64,000 nt of DNA from Blastocladiella emersonii ATCC 22665 (GCA_025594325.1 JANHCV010000008.1:496001-560000); one strand, 5' to 3'; shown: positions 1,985-21,905, counted from the stretch's first letter. Program-made: numbers and translations. The notes: a model not told the origin generated them from the letters alone.

Positions 1985-3927
1985 ATGATAGAAGCCAATG
2001 GATTCACACCGCAACTTGCTGCATCGCGGCCCGCGGGCAAGACGCATGAACTTTCTGCAACTGACAGTGTGAATGGAGACGCGACCAAAGTCCTCCTCGC
2101 GCTGCTCGGCTCGCGCATCGCCTACATCCGCCTGGGCCTCTCGCACCGACCCTGCAACGCGCCTTCTCGTCTAAGCCTGGCACACCGACACCCGGTCGCC
2201 GGTGTTGGAGAACTAAAAATCCAGCTACAGTCGGCGGCGCGGACCCCCCACGGCTTCTTCGGATCGAGGTCAACGGCCCGGTCGGGAAGACCGTTGCCGG
2301 CCGGAACACGGAACGCAAGTTTTGTCATCGAACTCATCTCGATCTGCATACACACAACTTGCTTCGCCGCACTCATCTCGATCTGCATCGCCGTCGCAAA
2401 CACGTTCTCCCTCGCGTTCTCGTACTTTGCCGCATCAACGGCCCGAATCCCGCTCTCGGTCCAGCGATTCCACCCGTCAATCGCGCGGGTCTCGGTCGCC
2501 ATCTCGTTCGCGATCACGGTCAACCAGCGTGCGATGCAGTCTGGAACCGTGAACCTGCTCGCCTGTACCCTGCCCGGCCGATAATGGTATGAACCCAACT
2601 TCGCCAGCTTCTCAAGCTACACAAGTTTCTCGAACTTCTAAATCTTCTCACTCTTCGCCAGCAGTTCAAGATTCTCAAGCTACTTCATCTTCTCCAGCCT
2701 CTCCAGCTTCGCTTTCCTCACTTGCGTCCAGCTTCTCGCACCAAATCGCCGGCGTGGACTTCGCCCGCAGGCCTAGCCCAATTCCGCGTCCTGCTCGACC
2801 AGATCATGGAGCAGGCCGGCCCAGGCACCCTTGCCCAGCTTGCTCTCCTCTGCCGTGCTGACATGCCGCAGCACGTCTTCCACGCGCTCGCCTTCGTTTT
2901 GGACACTAACACGCCCGACGCCGCCGCGCGGGACGCGATCGCCGAGACACTTGACCCGCGAGTCGCGAAATGGCTCGAGCTCACGCGCGGGGAATCCCAG
3001 TCGGCCCCGACCTTCGCGAAGCGGTTCCGCAAGTTTCTCGCTCGCGAGTCTTCCGCGGCCCCGTTCGCCACGCAGCCCGCGCTGCGGTTCGCGTTCATCG
3101 ACAAGGCCCTGGCTAGCGTTGCTGTGAGTGGGCCGGCGCGCGACCGGCTGTACCCCGGTGCACTGCGGTGGACCTCGCTCAACAAGCTCGCGGAGCTCGT
3201 GTGCTGCGCGATCCATGCGCAGCAGCAGCTCGAGAGGGAAATTGGATTGGTCGCGCCGTTCGTCGCGTCGGTGCCGGCGGGTTTGGAGGCACCGGGTCCG
3301 CTTGCTTTGACCGCGCCGAGCGCGTCCGCTGACCACAATGGCGCGAGGCCGTACAGGCAGAGAGCCAGTGCGCTCTCTCGGCTCACCGCGCCTCCAACAC
3401 CGGCTGCCCTGGTCCTTGACGAAGACATCTCCACTGCATCCTCTCCTTCGGCTGCTCTCACTGGTCGCCCACAGTTGATTGACTTAGCTGCCGATCGCAC
3501 ACGCGCTGGTTCGTCCGAGCTCGCTCCACCGAAACCCATGGAGAGCACCCCCATGCTCCCAGCGTGCACCTTCTGCCATCACCTCACCGCCCCCCCGCCC
3601 GCGCTCGCGCTCGACTCGCCGCCGCCAGCACACACGCTCGCGACATGTCCGCGGTCCCGCAACTCGCCCGCGATCGCGGCCGCTATCAGCCTCGCGCTTT
3701 GCACGGCAGGACTCTGGCCGGGTCCTTGCGTCTATACGGACGGCGAGGTCGTGGCGCGGATCCGCGTGCTGGTCGAGCAGTTTCGTGCAGGGGAGCAGGG
3801 TAGTGGGTCCACTGCCGCGGCGGCGGTTGCGGTAGGAGTCGCGAACCTCATTGCGTGCCTCGAGCTCGAGCGGGAGGACCGGTGGAGTGTTTGGTGCGCT
3901 GTGGGTCGCGCGATAAGGGATGGGTAG
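1985..3927 (+). pseudogene. RS/Gag-like family copy 1 (disrupted)
   Basis: All family domains are present but split: frameshift before ~2322, in-frame TGA at 2550-2552, and an apparent 5-nt deletion at ~2758 (GTGGACT|TCGCCC where paralogs read V-D/N-L-E-S-P). Confidence 0.8.
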
Positions 3928-4386: not shown

Positions 4387-6585
4387 ATGATAGAAACGAA
4401 TGAAAATCACTTGCAACTTGCTGCATCGTGCTCTGTGACTACTGTGGGTGACGTTGTCAACGCGACGGGTGACGCATCGCACGAGCGGCCGGCTCCTTCG
4501 AGGTTTGCCCTGCTTGACTCGCGCATTCAGACCATCCGACTGGGTCTCTCGCACCGACTTGGCGTTGCTCCGACCTTGGGCAACCCGACGCAGCTACCCC
4601 CGACGCAGCTACCCCCGACGCAGCTACCCCCGACGCAGCTACCCCCGGCGAATGTAGCGATGGAGCTAGAAAGCGAGATGGCGGTGTTCCTGGCCGCGGC
4701 GCAACTTGCAGCGAACTTTGCCAACGCCGGCGCTGTGGGAACCACGCCTGTCGAGCACCATCTCTACACGGAAAATCCCTCTACTTCGGACTTTATTCAC
4801 AGCTCCCGATCAAACTCACCTTTCGAAGCCGATAATCGCTCTTGGATACCCTCGCGCTCTCGTTCTCGCTCACGCTCACGATCTCGTTCTCGGTATTGGA
4901 CTCGCCGGTCTCCCGAGTTTTGGTCGCCTTCCCGCTCGCCGTCACGCTCGCCTTCTGACATACCGTGGCGGTCCAAGTCCCGTTCAAACTCGCGTTCTCG
5001 CTCCGGTCCTTGGATGCACCAGGCGCGCGAGTATCAGTCCCGCTCTCGCTCTCGGTCACGCCCACCCTGCGAAATGAATTGGCCAGCCAGGTCCCGCTCG
5101 CGTTCGCGTTCTCGGCCCCGACTTCGCCCGTCTCCACCTCCAACGGTTCAGCCGCGGTCGCGATCTCGCTCAACCAGTGCTCGGCGCAGTGCCAGACCAG
5201 AGCCCCGCTTATCTTCTCGAGGCTCGCATGCGCTGCTCTCAAACGAGGACCCGACATCGTACACCCCGCTTACTTCGATTGTTGACGGCTTCTCGTCTCA
5301 AATCTCCGACGTGAACCTGGAGTCACCAGCTGGACTTACCCGTTTTCGCACCTTGCTTGACCACGCCCTTGAAGCAGCTGGGCCGGGCAACCTCGCGCGC
5401 GCCGCGCTCCTCTGTCGCCGCGACATGTCGCAGCGCGCGTTCCACGCGCTCGCCTTCGTCTTGGACGACGAAATGTCCGACTCGACCGCTTGGCACGCCA
5501 TCGTCGAGGCGCTCGACCCAGCGCGCCGAACCGCGCGAGTCACAGAGTGGCTCGACCTTGCTCGCAGGGCAGATGAAACGGCGCAATGCTTCATGCGTCG
5601 ATTCAACAAGTTTCTCAGCCGCGAGTCGGCCGCGGCCCGCTTTGCGACTCGGCATGCGCTACGGTTTGCTTTCGTTGACAAGGCGCTGGCCTGGAAGGTT
5701 GTCGATCGTCGCGAGCGGCTCCAGCTCTATGACCTCGCCTTTCGGCGGACCTCGCTCAACACGCTGTCCGCGGCAGTCCACGAAGTGGTCAATCGTCAAC
5801 AGTCGAATGCGAGCGCCCGCATACGCGATGTGTCGCTGTCTCCGACCCCGCTTGGACGTGGCTCGAGTGCTTCGACAGCGAACAAGCTGGCCGCCGTTAC
5901 ATCGGCCACTAAGGTCGAAGTGGCGTCGACTGGACTGGCTGAGCCTTTGCCAACCGCTTCAACCGGAATCAAACCGGTCGCTCCAACATTACTTGCTCCA
6001 ACGACGCGGGTTCCGATCAAACCAGTCAAGTCTTCCTCTTTAGCTTCATCGGAACCGGACTTGGAAAAATTGACTGCTATTGGAGCACTAAAATCAAAGG
6101 AGCCTGATCATCCTCGCACCGCTCCCGCGTCGGTCAACGATTGCACCCTCGCTGGCTCCAAGGTCACAAAACCACGTACTTATTCCGCCCCCTCGCCTCC
6201 ATCAACGACTTGGAAAAAAATTGAGTGGTCGAACCCGGCTCCAGCTCCCCCGCCCGTGTGTGCCTTTTGCAATCACCTCGGCTTCCCCGTCTTGTTGCCG
6301 CCGCACACGGTTACTTCATGCGAGCTGGCCCGCGACACGCGCCCGATCGTGGAAACGATTAGCGCCGCGATCTCTGCGGCGCAACTCGACGTCAAAATCA
6401 ACGCCGTGACGGACAGTGAGATCGTCGCGCGGATCCAGTTACTCGTCAAGCAGCTCCGCGCGAGCGACTTGCGCACAAGAGCGGCGGCCGCGGTCTCGTA
6501 CCTCGAGGCGTGCTTGGTGCTGGACTGGCCGGAGCGGGGAAAGGTGTGGTGCGAGGTGTACACGGCGGTGATGGCTTGGGAGTAG
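4387..6585 (+). CDS. RS/Gag-like family copy 2 (intact, ~732 aa)
   Basis: ACCATG at 4387 is in frame with ORF 4096..6585. Contains IRLGLSHRL, an RS tract, the core GPGNLARAALLCRR...EWLDLARRADETAQCFMRRF, CAFC-x11-H-x4-C, and the YLEACLVLD...W tail. Confidence 0.85.
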   Translation: MIETNENHLQLAASCSVTTVGDVVNATGDASHERPAPSRFALLDSRIQTIRLGLSHRLGVAPTLGNPTQLPPTQLPPTQLPPTQLPPANVAMELESEMAVFLAAAQLAANFANAGAVGTTPVEHHLYTENPSTSDFIHSSRSNSPFEADNRSWIPSRSRSRSRSRSRSRYWTRRSPEFWSPSRSPSRSPSDIPWRSKSRSNSRSRSGPWMHQAREYQSRSRSRSRPPCEMNWPARSRSRSRSRPRLRPSPPPTVQPRSRSRSTSARRSARPEPRLSSRGSHALLSNEDPTSYTPLTSIVDGFSSQISDVNLESPAGLTRFRTLLDHALEAAGPGNLARAALLCRRDMSQRAFHALAFVLDDEMSDSTAWHAIVEALDPARRTARVTEWLDLARRADETAQCFMRRFNKFLSRESAAARFATRHALRFAFVDKALAWKVVDRRERLQLYDLAFRRTSLNTLSAAVHEVVNRQQSNASARIRDVSLSPTPLGRGSSASTANKLAAVTSATKVEVASTGLAEPLPTASTGIKPVAPTLLAPTTRVPIKPVKSSSLASSEPDLEKLTAIGALKSKEPDHPRTAPASVNDCTLAGSKVTKPRTYSAPSPPSTTWKKIEWSNPAPAPPPVCAFCNHLGFPVLLPPHTVTSCELARDTRPIVETISAAISAAQLDVKINAVTDSEIVARIQLLVKQLRASDLRTRAAAAVSYLEACLVLDWPERGKVWCEVYTAVMAWE
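4585..4644 (+). repeat. 15-bp tandem repeat x4 (CCGACGCAGCTACCC) encoding PTQLP
   Basis: Four exact units read directly; absent from the close paralog copy 6. Confidence 0.95.
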
Positions 6586-6749: not shown

Positions 6750-8494
6750 ATGATAGAAACCGATGAAAGACGATCACCACTTGCTGCAATGAGCTCGAAA
6801 ATACCTGCTGATGATGCACCCAGCGTAAATGGAGGAAACGAGCTGACCGCAATGTTGCTCCGCCTCTGCAACGAACGCCTGCAGCAGATCCGGCTCGGTC
6901 TCTCGCACCGACTTTCCAGCGCACCGTGGCTCTCGAACCGACTTTCCAACGCACCATGGAGTGTATCTTACGGGCCAGCTAGTGCTACGATTGGCGACCT
7001 TGGGGATCTGGCTGTCGCCCCCGCGATCGCATTGGGCTGCGTGGGAACGGCGGGCGAGGACGAACCACGCTTCGCGCCTGTGACCGACCAAGCACACTTC
7101 CGCCTCGAACTTCACCTTCAATCTCGACATACCTCTCAACCGACTCAGGAAATCGTGCAAAAGCCTCGTTTGACGAATTCGAAGCAACACCAATCTCTCT
7201 CTCTCTCAGCCCGCGGCCTGGGACAGTTCCAGGTCGAGGTCTCGCACTCATTTGCACTCTCAAGCTTGCGCTCGAACTTCCTCGCGTAATCGTTCACGTT
7301 CGCGTACTCGTTCTTGGTCCCGCAGTTCTTTGTGGTCCCGGCCGGAAACTCGCTCCAGCACTCGGTCTCCTCCGCGGTCTCCAGCTCCCGAGTCGCGTCG
7401 AACTCAGTTATCACCGGCTCCTAAACCCGGTGCGTCCTCGCGGACCGGCTTCCACAACAGTGGACATTCTCGAGACCTCAGCCCAGCTGCGCCTAGTCGC
7501 CCGACCGCTTCCTTGCCTGCACCCGCGGCGCAACAGCGACAGGGCAAGGCCAAAACGTACGACCCATCGTACCAGTTCTGCGCCCAGATCCGGAAGATTT
7601 CCAGCAGATCGCGGGCGTAGACCTGGAGACCCCGACAGGTTACGTCCTCATGTGCACCCTTCTTGACGAGCTCTTCACCTGCGCCGGCCTGAGAAAGCTT
7701 GCGCACGCGGTGCTGTTTTGCCGCTTCTCGCTTTCGCGGCGCGTGTACCACGCGTTCTCAGCCGTCTTGAACAAGGACACGGCCGATGACGCCGCACGCC
7801 AAGCCGTTCTCTACGCTATCGATCCGGCGCGGCGCTCGCGCCACTTGAACGAGTGGATCGACCTGGCGCGGTTTGTGCACGAGTCGGTCGGTTCGAGCAG
7901 TGTCTTCGCCGCCTCGGGTTCACCGATTTCAACAAGCTAGATATTCCAATTCGGTTCTCATTCCTTGACAAGACTCTCACTGGCGTTCTTAACGGCGGAG
8001 CACTCAACAATCTACGGGGCGAGGTGGTGGACGGACCTATGTCGCTCGCCAGCCTCACCAACCTCGTGCACAGCCGCGTACCTGACCCTCCGGCTCCTTC
8101 TGCTGTCCAGCCCGCGCGTGCTACAACCGAAAATATCCCCATCCCCGCGTGCGCCTTCTGCCAGCGCCTTGAAGGCGTTCTTGGCAGGAGGGACGCTCCA
8201 CACTGCCTTGTGGACTGCGTGCGTTCGCGAATGTTGGACCCAATCGTGTCCGCCATTACGCGAGGGCTTCGCGTCGCGCGGATCAGACTTACTCCCGACG
8301 ATATCGACCCGCCGACAGACGACGAGCTCGAGGCGCGCGTCTCGTTTGTTCTCAAGCGACTCCGCGCTGTCAAGGAAAGTGATGGACCGCTGTCTGCCGC
8401 CATCGCGCTCCTCGAGGCGTGCCTTGTCTTGGACGGCAACGCGCTGCGGAGCGTTTGGAGCGGGGTTTGTGATGCGATGACCACCACCAGGTGA
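6750..8494 (+). pseudogene. RS/Gag-like family copy 3 (disrupted)
   Basis: Three frameshifts: near the TC run at ~7195, a 1-nt loss at ~7604 just before IAGVDLETP, and a deletion at ~7888 inside the MHR-like motif. The knuckle CAFC-x13-H-x4-C and the tail are intact. A 30-bp duplication at ~6900-6960 doubles SHRLSSAPW. Confidence 0.8.
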
Positions 8495-8746
8495 GCCAGA
8501 GAAGAGAGAGCGATAGGCTAGAATACCTTTTTGCCGCGCGCTTTTGTGGGGGATGCGTTGATCTGTTAGAGGCCAGGTTGAGTTAGAGGGCGCGTGAGCC
8601 ATATTTTTTAATAGACGTTCGATGGAGCGATGCGGAGCCGCGGTGGTGTGGGATGGGAGACAAGCCGCCGCGCTCAAGGTGGCGCAGCGGACTTGTGATC
8701 CTCGCCGGATGGCACACACTCGCCTCTCCCCGCCCACCCTCGCACC

Positions 8747-10609
8747 ATGCATGAAACGAATGAAAGACTCCCGCAACTTGATGCAACCCTTTCGGCGGAC
8801 CCAGAAATGCAGGCGACAGCCTCCGGCGAGCGGCGAGGCGAGGCTGCCCTCCGAGTCCAACTCTGCGATGCACGCTTGCGCCATATCACGCTGGGCCTCT
8901 CGCATCGGCTCTCTGGAGCCCCTTGGATGGGCTCCGCAGCTTTCTGGACCTCGGCTGCTCCGATCCATCCTCTTGAACAACGCATCAGCTTGCTGGGAGC
9001 TGTAACCTGTGCGGAAGCGGGCGAACCAGCAAGCTCCAATGCTCAAGCTTCTGCACCCCTAGAGTCTCCAGACGTGCTCGCCGCGGTGCAAACGCATTCG
9101 GGTGCTCCATCAACGCCACCTATGCAAACGCGAACGCCTTCTCGCTCGTCCTCGCGGTCTCGTTCACTTTCACGTTCCCGTTCTCGCTCACGTTCAAAGT
9201 CTCGCTCTCGCTCTCGCTCACGTTCGAAGACTCGCTCTTGCACTCGCTCACATTCCCGTTCTCGCTCACGTCGCCGCTTTCACTCTCGCTCTCGCTCGCG
9301 CCCGCGCAGTAAGCGTCATTCGACTCGGCACCGCTCTCGTCGATTTCGCTCGCGCTCCTCCTCGCGCTCATCGCGGGATCCTGGACCCAGGTCGCGCTCG
9401 CGTCGGCGCACCCGCCGCGACTCTCTATCGCATTCGCAGTCGAGATCACGCTCCCGCTCTGCCGGTTCGCGTCCCGGGTCTCGTTCGCAAACTCGCTCAA
9501 CTTCGCTGCCCCAACGGAGCAACGCATACGAGTCCGGCTCATCGTATCGAACTACGGTTCGTCACAAAAGCGCTCGACGGAGGCTCCGCTGCTTTGTTCG
9601 CAACGTTGCACACTATATCCGGCAGGTGGACCTCGAAACTCCTGATGGATTGCTCAAACTGCGCGACTTTTTTGACGAGCATATCTTGGCTCGAGTTGGG
9701 CCGGGCACGCTCGCGTCCGCCGCACTGCACTGCCGCCGATGCCTGCTTCCGCACGTGTATGCTGCGCTCGCCTTGGTCTTGGAGGAGAACATGGCTGATG
9801 AGGCGGCGTGGGAGGCCATCACTACCGTGCTTGATCCTGCACGCCGTCCCGAGCGGGTCACCGACTGGATCGCTCTCGTGCGGGCTCAATGCGAGTCAGT
9901 TGACGAGTTCACTGGACGCGTGAAACGGTTTCTTGAGCGTAACGCCTTGGATAAACTCTTCGACACGCGGCCCGCTCTTCGACTAGCGTTTCTGGATAAG
10001 GCGACGACGCTTGATATTGGAACCAAGGCGCTAGAACTGCTCCAAGACCGCGCACAAACGCCCGTCACGCTTGGCAAGTTGGCCACTTTTATCAAACACG
10101 CTGAGAGGCGGCCCCTTGGGCGTAACGAGCGCACGGTTGTCGAGGCCCCACCTGTGCGCCTTGCTCCGTTGGTACAAGCGCAAAATCATACTTTGCCGAT
10201 TCCGCACTCGGTGCCGCCTGCTGCAGCGCAGCAGCCACCAACACCACTGTCGACTTTGTCCTGTGCGTTCTGTCGGCGCCTCGTCGTCCCACTTGGCCGG
10301 CGTGCTCCGCAACACCGCCTCGCAGACTGCAATCGAGTCCGTTTCACGCCTCCACTCACTGCCGCGGTCGACCACGCGATACGGGTGACGCGGCTGAACA
10401 TCACTCAAGCTGACCTGGACGCGGCGACGGACGAGGAGCTCACCGCTCGCATCACCTCGCTCGCCGATCGCCTTCGCGCGTTACAAGAGACCAACGACGC
10501 GGTCCCGCCTGGGGTTGGGTACCTGGACGCATGCCTTGTGCTTGATGCCCAGGAAAAGCGGAGGATCTGGAGCGCGGTCTGCGAGACCATTCAGACCAGG
10601 AAGCTGTAA
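8747..10609 (+). CDS. RS/Gag-like family copy 4 (intact, 620 aa)
   Basis: Uninterrupted ORF with all five family modules and a long RS tract. Confidence 0.85.
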   Translation: MHETNERLPQLDATLSADPEMQATASGERRGEAALRVQLCDARLRHITLGLSHRLSGAPWMGSAAFWTSAAPIHPLEQRISLLGAVTCAEAGEPASSNAQASAPLESPDVLAAVQTHSGAPSTPPMQTRTPSRSSSRSRSLSRSRSRSRSKSRSRSRSRSKTRSCTRSHSRSRSRRRFHSRSRSRPRSKRHSTRHRSRRFRSRSSSRSSRDPGPRSRSRRRTRRDSLSHSQSRSRSRSAGSRPGSRSQTRSTSLPQRSNAYESGSSYRTTVRHKSARRRLRCFVRNVAHYIRQVDLETPDGLLKLRDFFDEHILARVGPGTLASAALHCRRCLLPHVYAALALVLEENMADEAAWEAITTVLDPARRPERVTDWIALVRAQCESVDEFTGRVKRFLERNALDKLFDTRPALRLAFLDKATTLDIGTKALELLQDRAQTPVTLGKLATFIKHAERRPLGRNERTVVEAPPVRLAPLVQAQNHTLPIPHSVPPAAAQQPPTPLSTLSCAFCRRLVVPLGRRAPQHRLADCNRVRFTPPLTAAVDHAIRVTRLNITQADLDAATDEELTARITSLADRLRALQETNDAVPPGVGYLDACLVLDAQEKRRIWSAVCETIQTRKL

Positions 10610-11004: not shown

Positions 11005-12954
11005 ATGAGCTCCCCGCCGCCCTCGGAACCGTGTCCAGGACCATGCGAGCAGTCGTCCATCTTGGTCCGCCTGTGCGACCAGCGCATCAAGCTCATTCGG
11101 TCGGCTCTCTCGCACCGATTGTCTGATACGCCTTGGATTGGAACCGCGGCGTACAAAAACTCGACTCTTGCGATATCTGAGCTTGAGCAGGAGCTCTGTG
11201 CGGCTCAAGCAGCTGCGCAGGTTCCACTAGCAACCGACGACTTGGTAAGCGGAGATGAAGTTGCGCGTCATCCAGACCCTTTCCAGTCCTCGTCATCCGC
11301 ATCACTTTGCTCGCGTCGCTCGCCATCCCCGCGGAATTCTCGGTCGGCGTCAACATCCGTTACTCGTGGCCGCTCCCGCTCCCGCTCTCGCTCTCTATCG
11401 CGCTCTGCTGAGAGAGACCGCGATCGGCCATACTCGCGCTCCCGTTCACGCACCACAAAGCGAGGCCGGTCTCGATTGCGGTCTCGTTCGCGGTCGCACT
11501 CGCGCTCTGGAGGGCGATGAAAGACGCCGCATCGCTCTCCATCGCAATCACGCTCCAGCGCAGTGCGACGCAGCGCGAGATTGCGCACTTGCTCGCCGTC
11601 CCGCAGCTCGTACTCGCCCGCGCGACTCGCTGCTCCCAAGGAGCCCATGCCGTACAAAAAACTTCGACACATTGTTCGAGACAACACCAAATATCTTCGC
11701 GGAAAGAATTTAGAAACGCCCTCGGAGCTAAAATGGCTGCGCAGCTTTCTCAATCGGATACTGCGAGACGTTGGTTCTGGCAACCTTGCCAACGTCGCGC
11801 TCCTGTGCCGCCAGTGTCTAGAGCCGCAAGTGTACCACGCTCTGGCACTGGTCCTTGACCCAGATATGTCCGACGACGACGCTTGGGAGGCCATTGCTGA
11901 AGCGCTTGATCCGTCCCGCCGTCCCGCACGAGTCGCCGAGTGGCTTAACTTGTCTCGCGGCAGAGACGAGTCAGTCGCCGATTTTGCCCATCGCTTCAAG
12001 TTGTGCCTTGCCCGTGTCGGGTCCGCGCACTTTTATCGAACCCGGCTTGCAGTGCGGTTCACGTTCCTCGAAAAGGCTCTCGTTCATCCTGTTTCCAAGG
12101 AGACTTTGGATCGGCTCAACAACAGCACATCAAAACTTACTTCGCTGACTCCGCTGGTCGCCCAACTCCAACACCTCGAGACCAAACAGGTTACGCGCGG
12201 CCGTGATGCTCTCGCCAATGGTAAAGCGACTCCGGCTCGCGCGACAGCGATCCCGAGCGCATCGGCCGCTTCAGCTTCGCGGGCAGTCAAGAACGGACCG
12301 TCTCCAATCGTTGCAGCCAACTTGGGTTCACCTCCTCTTGACGCCCCGACTTCAGCTATCAACTCTGCGGCACCGCTTTCACTCGTTCCTGTGGTAGCAG
12401 CTGCAGATACACCCAAGCCTTCTACCAAGCCCATTCCAATCGTATGGGTGGACCCAGCTCCAACAGTCTTCAAGGACGAGGACCTGAGGCGTACTCTCCC
12501 GTCGCGCCCATCTCTCCGTTCGCGCTCACCGCCGCGCAACTCGCTTCCCGCACCGCTGGACCCGCCCGAGACCCCCAAGTCCTTCTCAGTCGCTTCCTTG
12601 ACAGACTCGGGTTGCGTGTTCTGCGAGTGTCTTGTCTTCCACGTTGATCGACGTGGCCCGCCACATATTCTCTCAAAGTGCAGGCGGGCGCGTAACACGG
12701 CCGCAGTTGTGTCGGCTATCAACCATGGCATCCGGGTCGCACGGCTTCGCCTCGTTCGTGCCGATCTCGATGCAGCGAACAACGGCGAGGTTGTGGCACG
12801 AATCCAGGCTCTCATTCAACGGCTCGAGGCGGTCGAGCAGACCAACAACGCGTTGCCGCCGGCCATAGGGTACCTCAAGGGATGCCTTGTGCTGGATCCT
12901 GAGGCGCGGAGTGGGCTCTGGCGCAAGATTAGTATGATGGCAAAGGTTGGGTAG
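11005..12954 (+). pseudogene. RS/Gag-like family copy 5 (single in-frame TGA)
   Basis: ORFs 11005..11520 and 11563..12954 are in the same frame, separated only by TGA at 11518-11520 (likely CGA>TGA in the RS tract). A downstream ATG (MPYKKLR) could still give a core-only protein. Confidence 0.7.
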
Positions 12955-13269: not shown

Positions 13270-15564
13270 ATGAACGAAGCGAATGAAACTCCACCGCAAC
13301 TTGCTGCATCGTGCCTTATGAGCACCATGGGTGCTGTCGGTGACATTTCGGGTGGGCGGTCAATTTCTTCCATGTTCGCCTTGCTCGACCTGCGCATTCA
13401 GAACATCCGACTGGGCCTCTCGCACCGTTTCGGCGGCATTCCGGTACTTGATAACCCGATGCAAGTTTCCACACCTGGCTCATCGACGGGGCTAGAGACC
13501 CAGCTGGCCGTGTTGCTGGAAGCGGCGCAGCTTGCTGAATACCCCGCCAACGTCAGCGGCGTGCGGCCCGTGCCCGCGGAGCCTCACCAAAGCGAACGGG
13601 ACACCTTTATGTTGGACTCTTTGAGCAGCTCCCGACCAAATACGTTTTTTGAGGCCGATGATTGGTCCAGGCCTCTTTCGCACTCGCGTTCTAGGTCGAG
13701 TCCACCTTCTTGGACACGTCACTCGCCCGAGCTTCAGTCGACATCCCGCTCGCCATTTCGCTCGCATTTGCAATCTCTCTCACGATCCAGATCTCGTCCA
13801 CGCTCGCGGTCCAGGTCACGCTCAAACTCGCGTTCCCGCTCTCGTCCTCGGACAGGTCACCCGCGCGGACGTTTGTCCCCTCGCCGTTCGCGAACGTGTT
13901 TGCCCTCTGAAATGCATTTGACGACCGGATCCCGTTCACGCTCGCGCTCGCGTTCTCGGCCCCGGTTCTGCTCGTCAACACCTCCAAGATCTCGATCGCG
14001 GTCGCGACCACGGCCGCGCTCGGCCAGCCCTCGGCGCGATGCCAGACCGCGGTTTCGCTCACCCGCTCGCGACTATATCGTGCGATGCTCGGAAGAGGGT
14101 CCAATCTCCTATGCTTCACTTTGCTCGGCTGTCGAACGTTTCTCGTCTCAAATCTACGGCGTGAGCTTGGAGTCATCCAATGGCCTCGCCCGTTTCCGCA
14201 CCATGCTGGACCACGTTCTCAAAGTCACTGGGCCGGGCAACCTCGCCCGCGCCGCGCTTCTCTGCCGCTGCGACATGTCTCGGCGCGCGTATCATGCACT
14301 CGCTTTCGCCTTGGACAAGGACATGTCTGACTCGGCTGCGTGGGAGGCGATCACCGAAGCGCTTGATCCGGTGCGCCGTCCCACTCGGGTCGTCGAGTGG
14401 CTCGACCTTGCTCGCAGGGAAAATGAATCGGAATACGGCTTCATGCGTCAGTTCGACGCGTTCCTGACCCGAGAGGGTGTCGCATCCCGTGTTGCAACTC
14501 AACCAGCCTTGCGCATTGTTTTCATCGACAAAGTGCTGACTGGCAACGCTGTCGACCAGCGCGAGCGGCTTCAGCTCTACGACCTCGCCGTTAGGCGGAG
14601 TTCGCTCAACACGCTGGTTAAGGAAGTGCAACGGATTCTTGAGCGCAAACGACAAATCCCGCGCGACGTGTCGCCACCTGCACTGCCAGCGGAGCCCGCC
14701 TTAGCCGCCCCAGCAGGGATTGAGCCTGCTGCATCGACCGCCCAACCCGAACCGAAAACAATCGACCTGGCCGGACCTATTCCGATCGCTCTGGCAAGAC
14801 TGGAACCACTCGCATCTGTCGAGGGTGCTCCAAGCGCAGCTCCAGACTTGAGCAGGTCGACCAGTCGAACTGTGATTGCACCGCCGGATCAACGCACCGA
14901 GTTGCCCAACCGGCCGAGGACGAATGCTCTCAGCCGCTTGAGCGCGCCTGCTGTGCGGCTTCCAAATACTTCGAGCACCGATCGCTCAAGGCAAAAACTG
15001 CCGGCAGCTTTGTCGTCTTGGATTAGGCCGCTTCTGCGCGCAGCGTCTCCACGTCCTCTACCAGCCTCGAGGGATCCTGATGATTCTTGCAAAGCTCGCG
15101 CGCCAGATTCTAGTTGTGTCCGCGCTGGTTCCAAAGTCGCAAAACCGCCTTCTCCCTCTCGACCTCCGCCTACATCCAAGGCTTGGAAACCCATCGAGTG
15201 GACCAACCCGGCACCGGCACCCGCTCCTTCATCCTTTTGCGCCTTTTGCGAGAACCTCGGCTTCCCCGCCCCGCTGCCGCCGCACACGGTCTCTTCTTGC
15301 CAGCTGGCCCGCGACACGCGCCCGATCGTGGACACAATCAGTACCGCGATTTGCAGGGCGCGGCTCAACGTACGGCTCAACGTCGTTACAGACAGCGAGA
15401 TTGTGGCGCGGATCCGGGTGCTGGTCGAACAGCTTCGCACAAGTGACTTGCGCGAAACTGCATCGGCCGCGATCGCGTACCTCGAGGCGTGCTTGGTGCT
15501 GGACCGGTCGACCAGGAGAATTGTGTGGTGCGAGGTGTCTACGGCGGTGATCGCTCGAGAGTAA
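13270..15564 (+). CDS. RS/Gag-like family copy 6 (intact, ~764 aa), closest to copy 2
   Basis: ACCATG at 13270 is in frame with ORF 13060..15564. All modules are present, and it shares the long linker and the KxIEWxNPAP motif with copy 2. Confidence 0.85.
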   Translation: MNEANETPPQLAASCLMSTMGAVGDISGGRSISSMFALLDLRIQNIRLGLSHRFGGIPVLDNPMQVSTPGSSTGLETQLAVLLEAAQLAEYPANVSGVRPVPAEPHQSERDTFMLDSLSSSRPNTFFEADDWSRPLSHSRSRSSPPSWTRHSPELQSTSRSPFRSHLQSLSRSRSRPRSRSRSRSNSRSRSRPRTGHPRGRLSPRRSRTCLPSEMHLTTGSRSRSRSRSRPRFCSSTPPRSRSRSRPRPRSASPRRDARPRFRSPARDYIVRCSEEGPISYASLCSAVERFSSQIYGVSLESSNGLARFRTMLDHVLKVTGPGNLARAALLCRCDMSRRAYHALAFALDKDMSDSAAWEAITEALDPVRRPTRVVEWLDLARRENESEYGFMRQFDAFLTREGVASRVATQPALRIVFIDKVLTGNAVDQRERLQLYDLAVRRSSLNTLVKEVQRILERKRQIPRDVSPPALPAEPALAAPAGIEPAASTAQPEPKTIDLAGPIPIALARLEPLASVEGAPSAAPDLSRSTSRTVIAPPDQRTELPNRPRTNALSRLSAPAVRLPNTSSTDRSRQKLPAALSSWIRPLLRAASPRPLPASRDPDDSCKARAPDSSCVRAGSKVAKPPSPSRPPPTSKAWKPIEWTNPAPAPAPSSFCAFCENLGFPAPLPPHTVSSCQLARDTRPIVDTISTAICRARLNVRLNVVTDSEIVARIRVLVEQLRTSDLRETASAAIAYLEACLVLDRSTRRIVWCEVSTAVIARE

Positions 15565-15716: not shown

Positions 15717-17389
15717 ATGTATGAAACGAATGAAAAACTCCAGCCACTTGATGCATTACGCTTCACGTGTCCAAATATGCAGTTGGCCGCTTCCGACGAC
15801 CCAAGGCACGAGGTCGACCTCCTGGTCCAAGCGTGCAACACGCGCCTTCACACCATTGTGCTCTACCTTTCAAACCGGCTTTCTGGCGTACCGTGGGTCA
15901 GCTCAGCGGCACTCTGGCCCACTTCTACTGCCCCGATCCGCGGGCTGGAATCTCGAGTTAGCTTGCTGAATCTTTGACGTGTGCGCGCGTGGGTGGCAGT
16001 GGATCGCGGGCTAGCTACGACGTCCGATCCGCTGAACTGAACGCAACGCCAGATCCTCTTGACGCAGCAGCGTCTGGTCCGAGTGCCCGAACCAAGTCAC
16101 CGGGCCCATCTCGAAGGACTTCGCGCACTTTATCGCGCTCTCGTTCCCCTAGGCGCCACATGTCTCGATCCCCTTCGCACTCTTTTCGGGCTTCTCGACC
16201 CAGGTCTCGCTCGCTTACGCGCACCCGGCACGGCTCACGATCGCCTTCGCGGCCAAGGTCGCGCTCCCGGGTACGCGGACGCCAAGGCGACACGTACGAG
16301 CTTGGTACTTCTCGTCGATCTGCCACCTCTCGTCAAATTTCGAGCAAGGGCCTGCGGCTTTATGTGCGCGACATTGCCCATTTCATCCGGCGCGAAGATC
16401 TGGAGACCCCCGGCGGGCTCGCGCAACTCCGCTTCTTCTTCAACAAGCACGTTCTCCCACGGACCGGACCGGGCACACTCGCGCGCGCCGCGCTGCTATG
16501 CCGCCGCTGTCTAGCCCCGCACGTGTTCGCTGCGCTCGCCCTGGTACTGGATCCGGGTATGCCCGACGAGACCGCGTGGAAAGCCATCACTTTGGCGCTC
16601 GATCCAGCGCGCCGATCCGAGCAGGTTTCCGAGTTCATTGCCATCGCGCGGGCAAAGGACGAGTCGGTCAACAATTTTGCGAGACGGTTCAAGCGATTCC
16701 TCTAGCATGTCGCGATGGACAGTCTCTTTGAATCGCGACCCGCGCTGCGCCTAGCGTTTGTAGACAAGGCAGCGACGCTTGACATCGGTTTGCTGGCGCT
16801 CGACCAGCTTCTGGATTGCGCACAGAAGCCCAGCACGCTCGGCACGCTGGCTGCTCTCATTCAGCGCGTCGAGCAGCTGCCCCTTGGTCGTCGCGAGCGA
16901 ACGGTTGCCGAGGAACCTCCCGTGCGCCTTGCTGCCCTGGTGAGTGCGCAACGCAGCCGTTCTCCAACGCTCGCGCGCACAACTCCACTTCCCGCAACAG
17001 TTCGTGAAGCAGCCACGGCACCACCGAGCCCGTCGGCTTCTTGCTCCTTTTGTCGTTGTCTCTTCATCACCCCCGGCCGGCACCTACCACCGCATAGCTT
17101 CGCTAACTGCAGGCGAGTGGGCGTCACGCCTCTGATTGTTTCTTCCGTCAACCACGCGGTCCGCGCGATCCGGTTGCGCGTCACTCAAGCCGATCTGGAT
17201 GCGGCATCAGACGGCGAAGTTGAGGCCCGCATTACCTCGCTCGCCGGTCGCCTCCGCGCGCTGCAAGCCACCAATAACGCGGTGCCGGAGGCGGTTGGAT
17301 ATCTTGACGCATGCCTTGTCCTCGATGCCAAGGAGATGCGGAGGGTCTGGAGCGCCATCTGTGATACTATTCTGGTCAGAAAGTTGTGA
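15717..17389 (+). pseudogene. RS/Gag-like family copy 7 (disrupted), closest to copy 4
   Basis: 1-nt frameshift at ~15972, and an in-frame TAG at 16703-16705 where copy 4 has GAG (KRFLE). Confidence 0.8.
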
Positions 17390-17656: not shown

Positions 17657-19633
17657 ATGAAAACAAATGAAAATCTTTCGTTACTTCATGCAATGAGCTT
17701 GATATCACCTTCAGAAAACAGTCCCGAACTGTGCGAGCAGTCGTCCATCTTGTTCTGCTTGTGTGACGAACGCACCAAGCACATCCGGTCGGTGCTCTCG
17801 CACCGCCTGACTGATACACCGTGGATTGAAACCGCAGCGTATCACGACTCAATCCTTGCAATTTCTGGCCTCGAAAAACAACTCTACGCAATGCAGGCCG
17901 CTGCGCAGTTCCCCCTTGCATCCGACGACGTTGCAAGCGGGGACGGGCTGCACCGGCCGAACTCTTGCCCGGCCTTTTCGGCTGACTCAATCCGTTCACG
18001 TCGCTCGCCATCCCGCTCGCGCTCTCGATCGCGTCCAGTCGGCCGGAACCGTAGCGGCCCACACCCACGCTTACGCTCGCGCTCACGCTCCCCTACTGTC
18101 TCTCGTTCAAGAAGGCGACGCCGGACTCTTTCACGATCGCGCTCGCGCTCAGAAGAGCGACTCAGGTCACCGCCGCGCGCTCGATCGCAGCCACGCTCGA
18201 GCCCAGCGCGACGCGACGTGAGATCAGGCTCTCGCTCGCCGTCCCGCAGCTCACCCGCATTCACGCGACCTGCCGTTTCCAAGGGCCCCATGTCACACAC
18301 CGAACTTCGTCTCTACGTGCGGGATAAAACTAGGCGCCTATGAGGCATCGACTTGGAGACGCCCTCAGGGCTCGCATGGCTGCGCAGCTTTCTCGACCAG
18401 ATCCTGCGCGTCACTGGTCCCGGCAACCTTGCCCAGGTCGCGCTTCTGTGTCGTCAGCGTCTGGTCCCGCGAGTCTATCACGCGCTGGCACTAATTCTTG
18501 ACCCCGAAATGTCCGACGAGGTTGCGTGGGGAGCCATCACCGAGGCGCTGGATCCGGCTCGTCGCCCCGCTTGGGTCTCCGAATGGCTCGGCCTGACTCG
18601 CGGTAGGGACGAGTCGGCCCCCGCCTTCGCCGGCCGCTTTGAGCAATGTCTCGCCCGCGTCGGGTCCACCGATCTTTATCAAATTCGAGTCGCTGTGCGG
18701 TTCACGTTTATGGAAAAGGCTCTCATCCGTACTCTCAACGTTCGATTTATGGATCGGCTCTACGACCGTGCTGCACAGCTGACCTCGCCATCCGAGCTAG
18801 CTGCCTTTATTCAACAACTCGAAACCAAGCAGCTTTTGCGCGACAAGCGTAGCCTTGCCGATGATGAATCGGCGACGGTGTGCGCGCCGGCGAGTCCGAG
18901 CGGATCGGCCGCCCTGTTTCCAGCGGCGGCCATGGACGAAGCGGCCCAACTCGCGGCCACGACCACCGACTCACTTTCACCCGCCGTCCCAATTTCGGAC
19001 ACCAACTCGATGGCATTGGCTTCACCTGCACCGGCGGCATCATCCACAATCACGCCCGAGTTATTCAACAAGCCAGCTCCCATCACATGGGCGGACCCAG
19101 CTCCAACGGCGGCCGCAAAGGAGAAAGTTCCGACGCTTACCTTACCACCGCGCCCATCGCTTCGCTTGCGCCCACTACTGCCCGCGCACCCTCCTTCGCC
19201 GCGCGGTCCACCTCTACGCGACCCGCCACCACGCGATCCAGCTCCTGCGGCTCCCGCTGCGTGGCCCGTCGCATCAACAACCGATTCGGCATGCGCATTC
19301 TGCCGGTGTCTTGTCTACCACGTCGATCGGCTCCATGTCCCACACCTTCTCATTCAATGCAAGCGGGCGCTGAATACCGATGCGACTGTATCGGCCATCA
19401 ACCACGCCATTCGGGTCTCGCGGCTTCGCTTTGTACGGGCCGATATAGCCGCAGCGAACGACAGTGAGGTCATGGCGCGAATCCAAGCGCTAATTCAACG
19501 GTTCGAGGCGATCAAGCAAGTCAACAATGCGGTGCCGCCGGCCATCGGGTACCTCAAGGGGTGTCTCGTGCTGGGCCACGAGCTGCGGGGCCGGCTCTGG
19601 AGCTTGGTTTGTAAGACGGTGAAGCTCGGGTAG
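17657..19633 (+). pseudogene. RS/Gag-like family copy 8 (single in-frame TGA), closest to copy 5
   Basis: ORFs 17657..18343 and 18353..19633 are in frame. TGA at 18341-18343 sits where copy 5 has Arg (YLRGKNLETP vs RL*GIDLETP). Confidence 0.7.
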
Positions 19634-19979: not shown

Positions 19980-21905
19980 ATGAAAACGAATGAAAGGCAG
20001 TTGCTACTTGCTGCAATGAACATAGAGAGACCTTTGGATCAGCCTGCAAAAGCCGGCGGGCTGAGCGATGACATGTCCAATTTGCTCCTCCGTTGCGAGA
20101 CACGCATACAACATATCCGCTTGGGCCTGTCGCATCGCTTACACGGCGCACAACCGAATGGGTCATCAATGCAGCAATCCATCTCGCCCGTGGCTGCTCA
20201 ACTCGATCAAGAGCTTGCCACGCCCATTGCCTCGGCGCCGTGTCCCGCGCAGCCGTCTGAGACAATGATCTCGAATCCGACACCAGATCCGGTGCAGATT
20301 CCCACGCCCATCAATGCCTCCAGCGACGACGGACCGTTGCTTTCGAAAACCGTCACTCGACCTCGCTCTCGTTCATGGTCGTTCTCTCGTGATCCGCCCA
20401 GCTCGCCCGTTCAGCTTAATTCTCGGCACGCTTCGCCTTCGCCTGCTCAGTTGAACAAGAGATCTCAGTCCCCGCTCGGCTCTCGGCCTGCTTCATGCTC
20501 GCGCTCGCCATCAAGGGCTCGGTCGCCTTCTCGCTCGTCACTTTCGCCCTCGGATTCTCGTCTTGCAAAAGAGCATTCCCGATCCCCGCGCACATATCAG
20601 TATCGTAATAGCTCGCGCTCACGGTCACACTCGCGCTCAAGGTCACGCTCACGCTCACGATCCCGGTCACGCTCACGATCCCGGTCACGCTCACGATCCC
20701 GGCCACGCTCACGCTCACGGTCACGCTCACGCTCACGGTCACGCTCACGCTCACGCTCGCGCTCGCGCTCGCGCTCCCCGTACATGCGCCATAGCCACAC
20801 TCGGTCGCGTTCCGGTTCTCGCTCTTACTCGCGCCGGAACAGCACGGCGTCCTTACAATCTCAACCACGCTCTCGGCGTCGCGGCGCTGGATCTCAAGTC
20901 AGCTCATCCTCCCGTGGGAATGCTGAACCCACTGGGTATTCTCCACTGGACGCCGCAATTCGAGCCGCTTCCGAGCGCTTGAAGAACATTGATTTCGAAA
21001 CTAACGCGGACCTGGCCGATTTCCGCGTCTTCCTCGCCGACGTTTGGGTGCGCTCCTACCCAGGCACTTTGGCGCGCGCCGCTCTTGCGTGTCGTCGGTA
21101 CGTGCCGCCGCGCGTCTACCATGCACTCGCGCTCGCGCTTGACGAGAGGATGTTTGACGAACCCGCGTGGGACGCGATCGCCGATACGCTCAGCCCGGAC
21201 GTTGGTTCCGCGCAAGTTTCCGAGTGGATGGACCTCACACGCGGCCACGATGAGCCGGCACTCGAATTTATTCGCCGCTTCGAGACCTGCCTCGCGCGCG
21301 TGGGCTCCGTTCTGTTCTTTGACTCGCGGCCGGCAGTCCGCTTGGCATTTCTCGACAAGGCGCTTGCTCGTCGGATCGACAACGAGTCGGCTCTTTCTCG
21401 TCTCGAGGAGGCTGTGACCCAACCCGGCTCGATCCACGAGGTTGTTGCGCGGATCCTGCGCACCGAAGATGGCATGCCGTCGCGTCAGCAAGCGCAGGTC
21501 CCGCCTGCGGAAGCTCGCCGCGGATCGCTGCCGCCACCCGCTCCGTTCTGCCGTTTCTGCGAGCGTATTTTCCGGGGCAAGGGCAAGGCCGTGGTTGCGC
21601 ACCCGCTGTCCACCTGCGAGCGCGCGCAGAACACGGCCGCGATCGTGAAAACCGTTGTCCTCGGGGTTCGTGGCGCAAAGCTTCAGTTTTCACCGGCCAA
21701 GTTGGACCCGTCAACGAACACTGGCGCGGCCTTGCACTGTTTCCGTGACCTCATCGAGCGGCTGCTAAGGTCCAAGAAGGCAAACCTGTCCGTGCTGCCC
21801 GCGGTCGGATACCTTGAAGCGTGCCTAGACCTCGATCGCGAGGGCACGATACGAATTTGGAATGCGATTTGTGCTGCGCTTTGCAAGCAGCACGAGAGAA
21901 AATAG
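19980..21905 (+). CDS. RS/Gag-like family copy 9 (intact, 641 aa; longest pure RS run)
   Basis: Uninterrupted ORF with a near-continuous (SR)n run at ~20610-20780, the core EWMDLTRGHDEPALEFIRRF, and CRFC-x13-H-x4-C. Confidence 0.85.
   Translation: MKTNERQLLLAAMNIERPLDQPAKAGGLSDDMSNLLLRCETRIQHIRLGLSHRLHGAQPNGSSMQQSISPVAAQLDQELATPIASAPCPAQPSETMISNPTPDPVQIPTPINASSDDGPLLSKTVTRPRSRSWSFSRDPPSSPVQLNSRHASPSPAQLNKRSQSPLGSRPASCSRSPSRARSPSRSSLSPSDSRLAKEHSRSPRTYQYRNSSRSRSHSRSRSRSRSRSRSRSRSRSRSRSRPRSRSRSRSRSRSRSRSRSRSRSRSPYMRHSHTRSRSGSRSYSRRNSTASLQSQPRSRRRGAGSQVSSSSRGNAEPTGYSPLDAAIRAASERLKNIDFETNADLADFRVFLADVWVRSYPGTLARAALACRRYVPPRVYHALALALDERMFDEPAWDAIADTLSPDVGSAQVSEWMDLTRGHDEPALEFIRRFETCLARVGSVLFFDSRPAVRLAFLDKALARRIDNESALSRLEEAVTQPGSIHEVVARILRTEDGMPSRQQAQVPPAEARRGSLPPPAPFCRFCERIFRGKGKAVVAHPLSTCERAQNTAAIVKTVVLGVRGAKLQFSPAKLDPSTNTGAALHCFRDLIERLLRSKKANLSVLPAVGYLEACLDLDREGTIRIWNAICAALCKQHERK

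What the first reader, a model, noticed from the sequence alone, without database searches (positions are those of the whole stretch)
11700..12190. Core domain maps onto the retrotransposon capsid fold, including an MHR-like motif with Q replaced by R
Seen: across copies the motif reads EWLNLSRGRDESVADFAHRF, EWLDLARGRGESIQEFKRRF, EWMDLARRDGESVREFSKRF, EWIRLVRRHGEPLGQFAARF and QWIGLARRKDESVEYFARRF. It is preceded by AWEAI.EAL and followed by FL(D/E)KAL and SL..L...E. Established: the Gag major homology region is h-x-Q-x3-E-(S/P)-x3-(F/Y)-x2-R-F (HIV IRQGPKEPFRDYVDRF; Arc LPQKQGEPLDQFLWRK), flanked by W..hK..h upstream and F..GL downstream. Inference: the whole CA N- and C-lobe is retained, and the normally conserved Gln is mostly Arg, a family-specific change that may alter assembly.
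Basis: partly seen in the sequence, partly recalled or inferred. Interest (0 to 1): 0.8.

Follow-up and report, generated by a model that had tools for sequence, protein, structure and literature searches.

The report
Tandem capsid-like gene family in Blastocladiella
The flagged motif belongs to a largely unannotated gene family, repeated in head-to-tail arrays in the water mould Blastocladiella emersonii, whose central domain is predicted to fold like a retrovirus capsid protein although its sequence matches no known family significantly and no retrotransposon machinery lies nearby.

Summary
The motif E-[S/T/P]-x3-[F/Y]-x2-R-F-x3-L occurs 11 times in the window, always inside one paralogous family and never elsewhere; 0.04 hits are expected by chance.

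The window is Blastocladiella emersonii ATCC 22665, contig JANHCV010000008.1, about 496-560 kb. It holds 16 head-to-tail copies: 5 intact, 9 with stops or frame changes, and 2 fragments. Each copy has an N-terminal helix box, an Arg/Ser-rich region, a ~190-aa helical core, a C-x2-C...H-x5-C box and a C-terminal helical domain. Five further loci on the contig hold about 40 more cores, most of them uncalled.

AlphaFold models are confident (pLDDT 93). In PDB fold searches of the C-terminal lobe, every match with TM-score at or above 0.4 is a retroviral CA C-terminal domain or MOAP1 (TM 0.5-0.64), but E-values are poor (>=0.7). Pfam hits to Gag families are all below threshold. The N-lobe was not tested alone.

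The "Q" position is Arg in the window copies but Pro in many relatives. No LTR, RT, protease or integrase was found.

Verdict: a probable Gag-derived, pol-less, birth-and-death gene family. The fold is supported, homology is not proven, and function is untested.

The parts
11005..12954 (+). Copy 5, the flagged copy: a full-length reading frame of 649 codons with one in-frame TGA
   Evidence: Translation; domain hits in one frame
11038..11187 (+). N-terminal helix box of copy 5 (L-x-L-C-D-x-R-I-x2-I-R-x2-L-S-H-R-L type)
   Evidence: HMM hit E 2.8e-24; conserved DNA family D6
11311..11640 (+). Arg/Ser-rich low-complexity region of copy 5, holding the premature TGA at 11518-11520
   Evidence: In intact copies this region is 18-25% R and 22-31% S, lower in the short region of copy 12
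11641..12210 (+). Capsid-like helical core of copy 5 (about 190 aa): N-part 11641-11913, C-part 11914-12210
   Evidence: Alignment A1; HMM hit E 1.2e-82; models on the copy-12 sequence; fold matches
11938..11997 (+). MHR-like motif EWLNLSRGRDESVADFAHRF
   Evidence: conservation counts
12604..12945 (+). C-terminal domain of copy 5; C-x2-C-x13-H-x5-C box at 12613-12681, followed by helices
   Evidence: no Pfam family and no zf-CCHC hit
1985..3927 (+). Copy 1: frame change between N-box and core
4387..6585 (+). Copy 2: intact
6750..8494 (+). Copy 3: three stops and a frame change inside the core
8747..10609 (+). Copy 4: intact (620 aa)
13270..15564 (+). Copy 6: intact
15717..17389 (+). Copy 7: frame change and a stop in the core
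17657..19633 (+). Copy 8: one in-frame TGA at 18341, at a different site from the stop in copy 5
19980..21905 (+). Copy 9: intact (641 aa)
44601..45931 (+). Copy 10: frame change in the C-terminal domain
54628..56318 (+). Copy 11: frame change in the C-terminal domain
56523..58061 (+). Copy 12: intact (512 aa); the sequence used for both structure models
58149..58562 (+). Copy 13: core fragment only (profile positions 46-183)
58921..60494 (+). Copy 14: domains in one frame, but the conserved ATG is out of frame and no ATG lies upstream in the open frame
60653..62571 (+). Copy 15: several stops and a frame change
62939..63818 (+). Copy 16: N-box and part of the C-terminal domain; no core detected

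Best explanation
The motif marks the most conserved stretch of a lineage-specific multigene family of Blastocladiella emersonii.

Each gene encodes a short N-terminal helix box, an Arg/Ser-rich disordered arm, a ~190-aa all-helical core, a variable linker, a C-x2-C-x11-18-H-x5-C box and a C-terminal helical domain. The C-terminal four-helix part of the core has the fold of the retroviral capsid (CA) C-terminal domain. The MHR-like turn-helix sits at the start of that part, which is its position in orthoretroviruses.

I read the family as derived from a gag gene of a reverse-transcribing element. It has lost all pol and LTR context and was amplified by unequal crossing-over into head-to-tail arrays. 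These evolve by birth and death: old duplicates under purifying selection, with frequent recent inactivation.

Inferred mechanism: the CA-like lobes mediate self-association into oligomers or shells. The RS-rich arm and the zinc box bind nucleic acid, in the way that arginine-rich arms of other capsid proteins do. Rapid diversification in arrays fits a role in conflict with retroelements or viruses, as a Gag-derived interfering or decoy protein.

Shown here: family, architecture, copy map, selection signature, predicted fold and its best fold matches, absence of pol and LTR. Inferred: homology with Gag, self-assembly, nucleic-acid binding, biological role.
For: Family and architecture.

Genomic setting:
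- The window is B. emersonii contig JANHCV010000008.1; L001 is identical over 5691 nt.
- Only 6 hits turned up among 1.84 billion representative proteins, all on this contig.
- About 40 further cores lie in L001-L005, spread over about 800 kb.

Fold:
- Model quality: pLDDT 92.9, pTM 0.86 for the core; pLDDT 93.0, pTM 0.82 for the C-part.
- C-part against PDB, all retroviral CA-CTDs: MLV 6gza_A (TMq 0.53, TMt 0.59, rmsd 3.6, prob 0.87), HIV-1 1a43 (TMt 0.64), BLV, HIV-2, HTLV-1 and RSV. The Gag-derived MOAP1 7lgc_B scores 0.57. The other matches are mostly kinase chains at TM about 0.25.
- Whole core against PDB and BFVD: mostly full-length retroviral CA/Gag, plus Ty3 and caulimovirid coat proteins.

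Sequence:
- Motif positions conserved across 26 cores: W 26, E 20, S/T/P 24, F/Y 26, R/K 22, F/Y 24, L/I 24.
- Weak but convergent Pfam hits: PNMA E 9e-5, Retrotrans_gag, and Gag_p24_C aligning the motif to profile positions 5-48.

Evolution:
- dN/dS of 0.26-0.32 in the closest pairs.
- Independent stops in sister copies.
- The assembly is PacBio HiFi with Pilon polishing, so the lesions are probably real (PMC9730499).
- The RS-rich region is kept in divergent subfamilies.
Against: - No sequence search reaches significance against any Gag family or solved CA structure.
- Foldseek E-values are 0.06-7, and TM-scores of 0.5-0.64 for a roughly 80-residue helical domain are borderline.
- The motif stretch matches His_Phos_1/CobC as well as it matches Gag models.
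- The N-part was not searched alone. Whole-model TM-scores are low (0.2-0.4).
- The canonical MHR Gln is absent in all 26 cores.
- The zinc box is not a C-x2-C-x4-H-x4-C knuckle.
- No relative linked to pol was found, so no donor element is known.
- Two thirds of the window copies are broken and most are not annotated. No evidence on expression was available, so a host function is not demonstrated.
Confidence: 0.55

Rival explanations
1. A selfish relic. The copies are gag-only remnants of a defunct or non-autonomous retroelement, or a satellite-like repeat that happens to carry an ORF. They were amplified in a gene-poor, repeat-rich part of the chromosome and have no host function. The fold is CA-like, but the arrays are decaying junk.
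For: - 11 of the 16 window copies are broken or fragmentary.
- Most copies are not called as genes in the public annotation.
- Arrays continue over about 800 kb of one contig, with PIF1-like fragments nearby.
- No orthologue turned up outside this species among 1.84 billion proteins, and a metagenome scan found none.
Against: - No LTRs or inverted repeats flank the units.
- No RT, PR or IN was found in about 170 kb sampled.
- Paralogues are old (35-47% identity in the core, synonymous sites near saturation) yet show dN/dS of 0.26-0.32.
- Five copies keep 512-765-codon ORFs with a conserved start context.
- Lesions in sister copies are independent and recent.
Confidence: 0.2
2. Not Gag-related. 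The core is a novel lineage-specific helical domain. The MHR-like motif and the resemblance to the CA C-terminal domain are convergent, or a by-product of small helical bundles looking alike.
For: - All Pfam and PDB sequence hits are sub-threshold, and unrelated families (His_Phos_1, SPK, AppA_4HB) score alike.
- No Foldseek match has E below 0.001.
- The MHR Gln is absent, the zinc box is non-canonical, and there is no pol linkage.
- The published case of the Ty3 'MHR' shows that such motifs can mislead (PMC6525542).
Against: - Among 350,542 PDB chains, the best matches of the C-part are CA-CTDs of six retroviruses from five genera plus MOAP1. The only other matches are far weaker.
- The whole core independently retrieves full-length CA and Gag from two libraries.
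- The motif sits at the start of the four-helix lobe with the same spacing as in retroviral MHRs.
- The only Pfam families hit by members of both subfamilies are Gag-clan ones.
Confidence: 0.25
3. Only the C-terminal lobe is CA-derived, as in a SCAN domain. The protein would be a nuclear dimerising factor (RS arm for nuclear or speckle targeting, zinc box for nucleic-acid binding) and not a capsid-former.
For: Fold support is firm only for the C-part. RS-rich arms and a Cys/His box are typical of nuclear RNA- or DNA-binding proteins (general knowledge). No internal N/C duplication signal was found.
Against: Whole-core alignments span about 200 columns of full-length CA proteins. The N-part is as conserved and as confidently folded as the C-part.
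Confidence: 0.15

Closest known systems
Orthoretroviral capsid protein CA (HIV-1 p24, MLV p30, RSV, BLV, HTLV-1), especially the C-terminal domain with its major homology region
   Same: The C-part is a four-helix lobe with a turn-helix motif at its start. The pattern E-[S/P]-x3-[F/Y]-x2-R-F-x3-L and the spacing to the upstream polar residue are the same. These are the best fold matches in the PDB (TM 0.5-0.64). The overall length (~190 aa) and helix count (11) are similar to those of CA.
   Different: Sequence similarity is not significant. The MHR Gln is replaced by Arg or Pro. There is no matrix domain, protease sites or canonical NC knuckle, and no pol, env or LTR. Equivalence of the N-part is untested. 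The host is a fungus and the genes lie in tandem arrays.
Domesticated Gag genes of animals (PNMA/MOAP1, Arc, RTL/SIRH, SCAN domain) and the fungal Crtg12-14 genes
   Same: A gag-like CA domain is kept without pol. MOAP1 CA-CTD (7lgc_B) matches at TM 0.57. The PNMA Pfam model is the best Gag-clan sequence hit (E 9e-5 on P0002). The coding sequence is under purifying selection.
   Different: The known fungal cases are single-copy and found in Dikarya (PMC8321522). Here there are dozens of tandem copies with many pseudogenes, in Blastocladiomycota. No orthologues in other species and no donor element were identified. An RS-rich arm and a long-spaced Cys/His box are added.
Ty3/Metaviridae Gag (Pfam Retrotrans_gag, PF03732)
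   Same: Weak hits of three proteins put the motif on profile positions 42-80. Ty3 CA 6r24_B appears among whole-model matches (rank 49).
   Different: Scores of 12-15 bits lie far below the 24.1-bit cut-off. The Ty3 'MHR' is reported not to be structurally equivalent to the retroviral one, whereas here the motif opens the C-terminal lobe. No Arc or Ty3 chain ranks among the top C-part matches.
Gag-derived restriction factors (mouse Fv1, sheep enJS56A1, yeast Ty1 p22); from my own knowledge, not tested
   Same: These are Gag-like proteins without pol, and rapid diversification is expected under conflict.
   Different: This is a functional analogy only. No target element, expression data or assay exists here.

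Membership tests
Retroviral/retrotransposon Gag capsid (CA) superfamily | C-terminal domain: four-helix CA-CTD fold | tested here: met
   C-part model has pLDDT 93. Top PDB matches are CA-CTDs of MLV, BLV, HIV-1/2, HTLV-1 and RSV plus MOAP1, with TM 0.5-0.64 and rmsd 3.4-4.9 over 76-94 columns. E-values are weak (>=0.7).
Retroviral/retrotransposon Gag capsid (CA) superfamily | N-terminal helical domain equivalent to CA-NTD | tested here: inconclusive
   Whole-core searches align about 200 columns to full-length CA, but with TM 0.2-0.4 and rmsd 16-18.
Retroviral/retrotransposon Gag capsid (CA) superfamily | Significant sequence-profile match to a Gag-clan model (PF03732, PF00607/PF19317, PF14893) | tested here: not met
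   Best scores are PNMA 22.4 bits (cut-off 25), Retrotrans_gag 12-15 bits (24.1) and Gag_p24_C 13.1 bits (25.9). A profile search of PDB sequences found no CA. HHsearch against Pfam was not available.
Orthoretroviral major homology region | Q-G-x2-E-x7-R with conserved Gln, Glu and Arg at the start of the CTD | tested here: not met
   Glu (20/26), Arg/Lys (22/26), the aromatic residues and Leu are kept with the right spacing. The Gln position is R 17, P 8, A 1 and never Q. The residue-level superposition is not printed by the tool.
Gag polyprotein of LTR retroelements | Nucleocapsid zinc knuckle C-x2-C-x4-H-x4-C downstream of CA | tested here: not met
   The box is C-x2-C-x11-18-H-x5-C. There is no zf-CCHC or other Pfam hit on ten C-terminal domains.
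LTR retrotransposon / endogenous retrovirus | Linked pol (PR, RT, RNase H, IN) and flanking LTRs | tested here: not met
   No such Pfam domain occurs in 29 window ORFs or in 10 long family ORFs of other loci. Direct repeats are confined to coding parts and the start region, and there are no inverted repeats.
Domesticated (co-opted) gag gene | Purifying selection on the coding sequence | tested here: met
   Nei-Gojobori dN/dS of 0.26-0.32 for the closest paralogue pairs and 0.16-0.40 for the 20 least-diverged pairs. These are paralogue comparisons only.
Domesticated (co-opted) gag gene | Orthologues retained across species at a syntenic site | tested here: not met
   All 6 hits among 1.84 billion representative proteins are from the same B. 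emersonii contig. A metagenome scan was empty. Genome DNA of other blastoclads could not be searched.
Domesticated (co-opted) gag gene | Expression and a host function | not testable with these tools
   No transcript or proteome data could be reached. The genome paper does not mention the family.
Capsid-forming Gag-like protein (Arc/PNMA2 type) | Self-assembly into closed shells | not testable with these tools
   Requires recombinant protein and EM.

The most novel reading that the evidence does not exclude
An early-diverging fungus maintains a chromosome-scale array of pol-less capsid genes that arose independently of animal Arc, PNMA and RTL. Their products (RS arm + CA fold + zinc box) would form RNA-binding capsid-like assemblies or act as an evolving Gag-derived restriction system. 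The family would also carry an orthoretrovirus-type MHR placement outside Retroviridae, which bears on when that motif arose in reverse-transcribing elements.
Probability: 0.2. Interest if true: 0.85.

Novelty: new variant of a known kind. Interest (0 to 1): 0.62.

Why it matters
Co-opted gag genes are well studied in animals. The fungal cases reported in the one survey I read are three single-copy genes in Dikarya (PMC8321522).

If homology holds, this would be the first capsid-like family described in Blastocladiomycota, as far as my searches show. It would also be by far the most amplified one, with a new domain combination of an RS-rich arm, a CA fold and a long-spaced Cys/His box.

It also shows how such families escape notice. 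Most copies are not in the public annotation, and no sequence method recognises them. Only structure prediction links them to capsids.

The family offers a natural series of diverged CA-like domains for testing which MHR positions matter for assembly. B. emersonii is a laboratory model fungus in which to ask what a pol-less capsid array does.

Tried and rejected
Searches that led nowhere:
- Two word-indexed protein searches with the intact copy 56523-58061, once whole and once for residues 170-512, returned nothing. The RS-rich words probably swamp the index, and the window copies are not annotated.
- An exact look-up of that protein found no record.
- Profile and single-sequence searches of PDB sequences gave no capsid hit. 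They returned only SH2D3C, CobC and a mosquito protein at E above 0.09.
With A1 it found nothing in metagenomes.
The third word-indexed protein search was left unused, because the exhaustive profile search had already answered the question.

Ideas rejected:
- Kinetoplastid origin was my first guess, from the GC content and the intronless arrays. It was rejected when L001 proved identical to the window end.
- Frameshift in the flagged copy: rejected. The lesion is a single in-frame TGA.
- A stop shared by sister copies 5 and 8, which would suggest read-through: rejected. The stops lie at different sites.
- Internal duplication of the N-part and C-part: hhalign probability 0.4%.
- Rfam and tRNA scans of the window: empty.

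Not possible:
- A profile-profile comparison with real Gag alignments. No Gag sequence was obtainable from a tool, and I did not type one from memory.

Full report
**1. What is at the coordinates**

In the flagged copy the motif lies at 11938-11997. AWEAIAEAL lies upstream (11881-11907), and FLEKAL and SLTPLVAQLQHLE lie downstream.

A stricter form of the motif, E[STP]x3[FY]x2[RK][FY]x3[LI], has 11 six-frame hits in the 64-kb window. All are inside copies of one gene family. Codon-shuffled windows give 0.04 hits. The repetition reflects paralogy, so the statistical weight is that of one origin.

**2. The gene family**

HMMs for three conserved modules were run on all six frames, and direct-repeat families were mapped. 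Together they define 16 head-to-tail copies on the + strand:
- ten between 1985 and 21905, with a period of 2.0-2.6 kb;
- one at 44601;
- five from 54628 to the window end.

The shared architecture is:
- a conserved start (M-x-E-T-N-E type);
- a helix box (L-x-L-C-D-x-R-I-x2-I-R-L-G-L-S-H-R-L type);
- an Arg/Ser-rich stretch of 90-240 residues, 18-25% R and 22-31% S in most intact copies;
- a ~190-aa core;
- a variable Pro/Ala/Ser linker;
- a C-x-F-C-x11-18-H-x5-C box;
- a helical tail of about 90 residues.

Five copies are intact: 4387-6585, 8747-10609, 13270-15564, 19980-21905 and 56523-58061. The others carry stops or frame changes or are fragments.

The flagged copy (11005-12954) is a 649-codon frame with a single TGA at 11518-11520 in the RS region. 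Its sister copy (17657-19633) has a single TGA at a different site.

Cores are 35-47% identical. Synonymous sites are near saturation, and dN/dS is 0.26-0.32 in the closest pairs. These are old duplicates that evolved as coding sequence, with recent independent inactivations. That is a birth-and-death pattern.

**3. Where the window comes from**

A profile of the core was searched against 1.84 billion representative proteins and gave only six hits. All six are hypothetical proteins of Blastocladiella emersonii ATCC 22665 on one 1.8-Mb contig.

The locus fetched for one of them (L001, JANHCV010000008.1:554310-576481) is identical over its first 5691 bases to window 58310-64000. The window is therefore about 496001-560000 of that contig.

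The assembly is PacBio HiFi polished with Pilon (PMC9730499), so most lesions should be real. The genome paper does not mention the family.

In the public gene calls, the window copies inside L001 are not annotated at all. Four other loci on the contig (727-748, 948-969, 1153-1177 and 1277-1302 kb) hold 5-11 cores each, most of them uncalled. About 55 cores were seen in about 170 kb sampled. This sampling is biased, because the loci were chosen for holding a member.

Divergent subfamilies keep the RS-rich region. One copy has it C-terminal of the core.

**4. Is the core a capsid fold?**

Sequence evidence is weak.
- Retrotrans_gag hits two window proteins and one relative at 12-15 bits.
- Gag_p24_C hits two cores at 13 bits, aligning the motif to the MHR end of that model.
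- PNMA hits P0002 at 22.4 bits (E 9e-5).
- All of these lie below the curated cut-offs.
- The motif stretch also hits histidine phosphatase/CobC at like scores.
- Profile searches of PDB sequences find no capsid.

Structure evidence is better.
- AlphaFold2 on the 11-sequence alignment gives an 11-helix model with pLDDT 92.9 and pTM 0.86.
- Foldseek of the whole core against the PDB has no significant E-value. About 35 of the top 50 are full-length capsid proteins of BLV, HTLV-1, HIV, SIV, MLV and RSV, plus Ty3, aligned over about 200 columns. The low TM-scores fit a different hinge angle between the two parts.
- Against BFVD, retroviral Gag and caulimovirid coat proteins dominate.
- The C-part alone (residues 92-190, from just before the motif) folds with pLDDT 93.0. 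Its best PDB matches are CA C-terminal domains:
  - MLV 6gza_A (TMq 0.53, TMt 0.59, rmsd 3.6, prob 0.87);
  - BLV 4ph1 (TMt 0.56-0.59);
  - HIV-1 1a43 and 3lry (TMt 0.64);
  - HIV-2, HTLV-1 and RSV (TMt 0.60).
- The Gag-derived MOAP1 7lgc_B also matches (TM 0.57). The remaining matches are mostly kinase chains at TM about 0.25.

The targets are 71-87 residues long and are covered almost entirely. The motif helix must therefore pair with the first CTD helix, which is the orthoretroviral MHR position.

**5. The motif in detail**

Across 26 cores from the window and four other loci, conservation is as follows:

| Position | Count out of 26 |
|---|---|
| Trp before the motif | 26 (invariant) |
| Glu | 20 |
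| S/T/P | 24 |
| First aromatic residue | 26 |
| Arg/Lys | 22 |
| Second aromatic residue | 24 |
| Leu/Ile | 24 |

The position four residues before the Glu is where orthoretroviruses have Gln. Here it is Arg in 17 cores (all window copies), Pro in 8 and Ala in 1. It is never Gln. The Gln-to-Arg change is thus a subfamily trait.

**6. What it is not**

- No reverse transcriptase, protease, RNase H or integrase domain was found in 29 window ORFs or in ten long family ORFs elsewhere.
- No LTR-like or inverted repeats flank the units.
- The Cys/His box is not a retroviral zinc knuckle and matches no Pfam family.

This is not a retrotransposon locus. It is a tandem array of gag-like genes without pol.

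**7. Explanation and rivals**

Best reading (about 0.55): a Gag-derived CA-fold family, amplified by unequal crossing-over and evolving by birth and death. The products self-associate through the CA-like lobes and bind nucleic acid through the RS arm and zinc box. The RS arm resembles the arginine- and serine-rich arms of other capsid proteins, such as hepatitis B core (my own knowledge). The role may be in conflict with retroelements or viruses.

Rivals:
- a decaying selfish gag-only relic (0.2);
- a novel helical domain with convergent resemblance (0.25);
- a SCAN-like case in which only the C-lobe is capsid-derived (0.15, overlapping the best reading).

**8. Comparison with known systems, and novelty**

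The closest known are orthoretroviral CA-CTD (by fold), PNMA/MOAP1 (by fold and by the best sequence score) and co-opted gag genes in general. The fungal co-opted gag genes reported so far are single-copy and occur in Dikarya (PMC8321522).

This family differs from them in host lineage, copy number, tandem organisation, the RS arm, the long-spaced Cys/His box and the lack of any recognisable sequence signature. I rate it a new variant of a known kind, with the homology still to be proven.

**9. Limits**

- No contig here is human.
- The broken copies were read only piecewise, or with X at the stop.

Noticed in passing
window 58310-64000 = L001 1-5691: The window is B. emersonii ATCC 22665 contig JANHCV010000008.1 at about 496-560 kb. 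The public gene calls list no gene for the family copies in this overlap, including one with all domains in frame. Most of the family is therefore missing from protein databases.
   Followed up: yes
L003 10001-13458 (P0002) and L001 10001-12172 (P0001): The annotated protein P0002, with 'three tandem cores', spans three neighbouring genomic copies (cores at 10034, 11302 and 12946) joined by predicted introns. P0001 contains stretches that look like an RS region read out of frame. Both gene models look like artefacts of predicting across an array.
   Followed up: partly
window 21956-24356 and 46121-48664; 42813-44396(-) and 52640-54205(-); 28703-29857 and 49532-50455: Neighbouring genes are also duplicated as a block. 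Two unknown families appear after a gag-like copy in both places, two DUF4470 genes share 82-86% identical DNA segments, and there are two LRR genes. The whole region is a segmental-duplication hotspot.
   Followed up: partly
window 24500-28600: A stretch with GC of 0.68-0.75 holds long overlapping ORFs on both strands. One of them (24577-26235) carries ankyrin repeats, and a 1141-codon ORF (24968-28393) has no Pfam hit.
   Followed up: no
window 642-1844: An ORF matches Pfam SAXO1-2 (stabiliser of axonemal microtubules, E 1.3e-9), which fits a flagellated zoosporic organism. A longer antisense ORF overlaps it.
   Followed up: no
L002 20328-20942 and L003 20736-21826: PIF1-helicase-like gene fragments (weak Pfam hits on record) lie next to family arrays in gene-poor stretches. 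They may be Helitron-type remnants.
   Followed up: no
L005 9437-11398: One divergent copy has its RS-rich region C-terminal of the core instead of N-terminal, followed by a C-x2-C...H...C box. Domain order has been shuffled within the family.
   Followed up: no
motif region of the cores, e.g. window 11914-12030: The stretch W-x7-9-G-E-[ST]-x3-F-x2-R also scores against histidine phosphatase (His_Phos_1, CobC structures 6nru and 6e4b) at E 0.01-0.3. This is a reminder that the motif alone is not diagnostic.
   Followed up: yes
window 1959-2023, 4361-4425, 8721-8785 and seven more (repeat family D5): A segment of about 65 nt around the start codon (C-rich tract, ACCATG, then codons for x-E-T-N-E and Q-L-A-A) is conserved between copies that are otherwise only 35-47% identical in protein. 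This suggests a conserved translation-start or 5' regulatory element.
   Followed up: no
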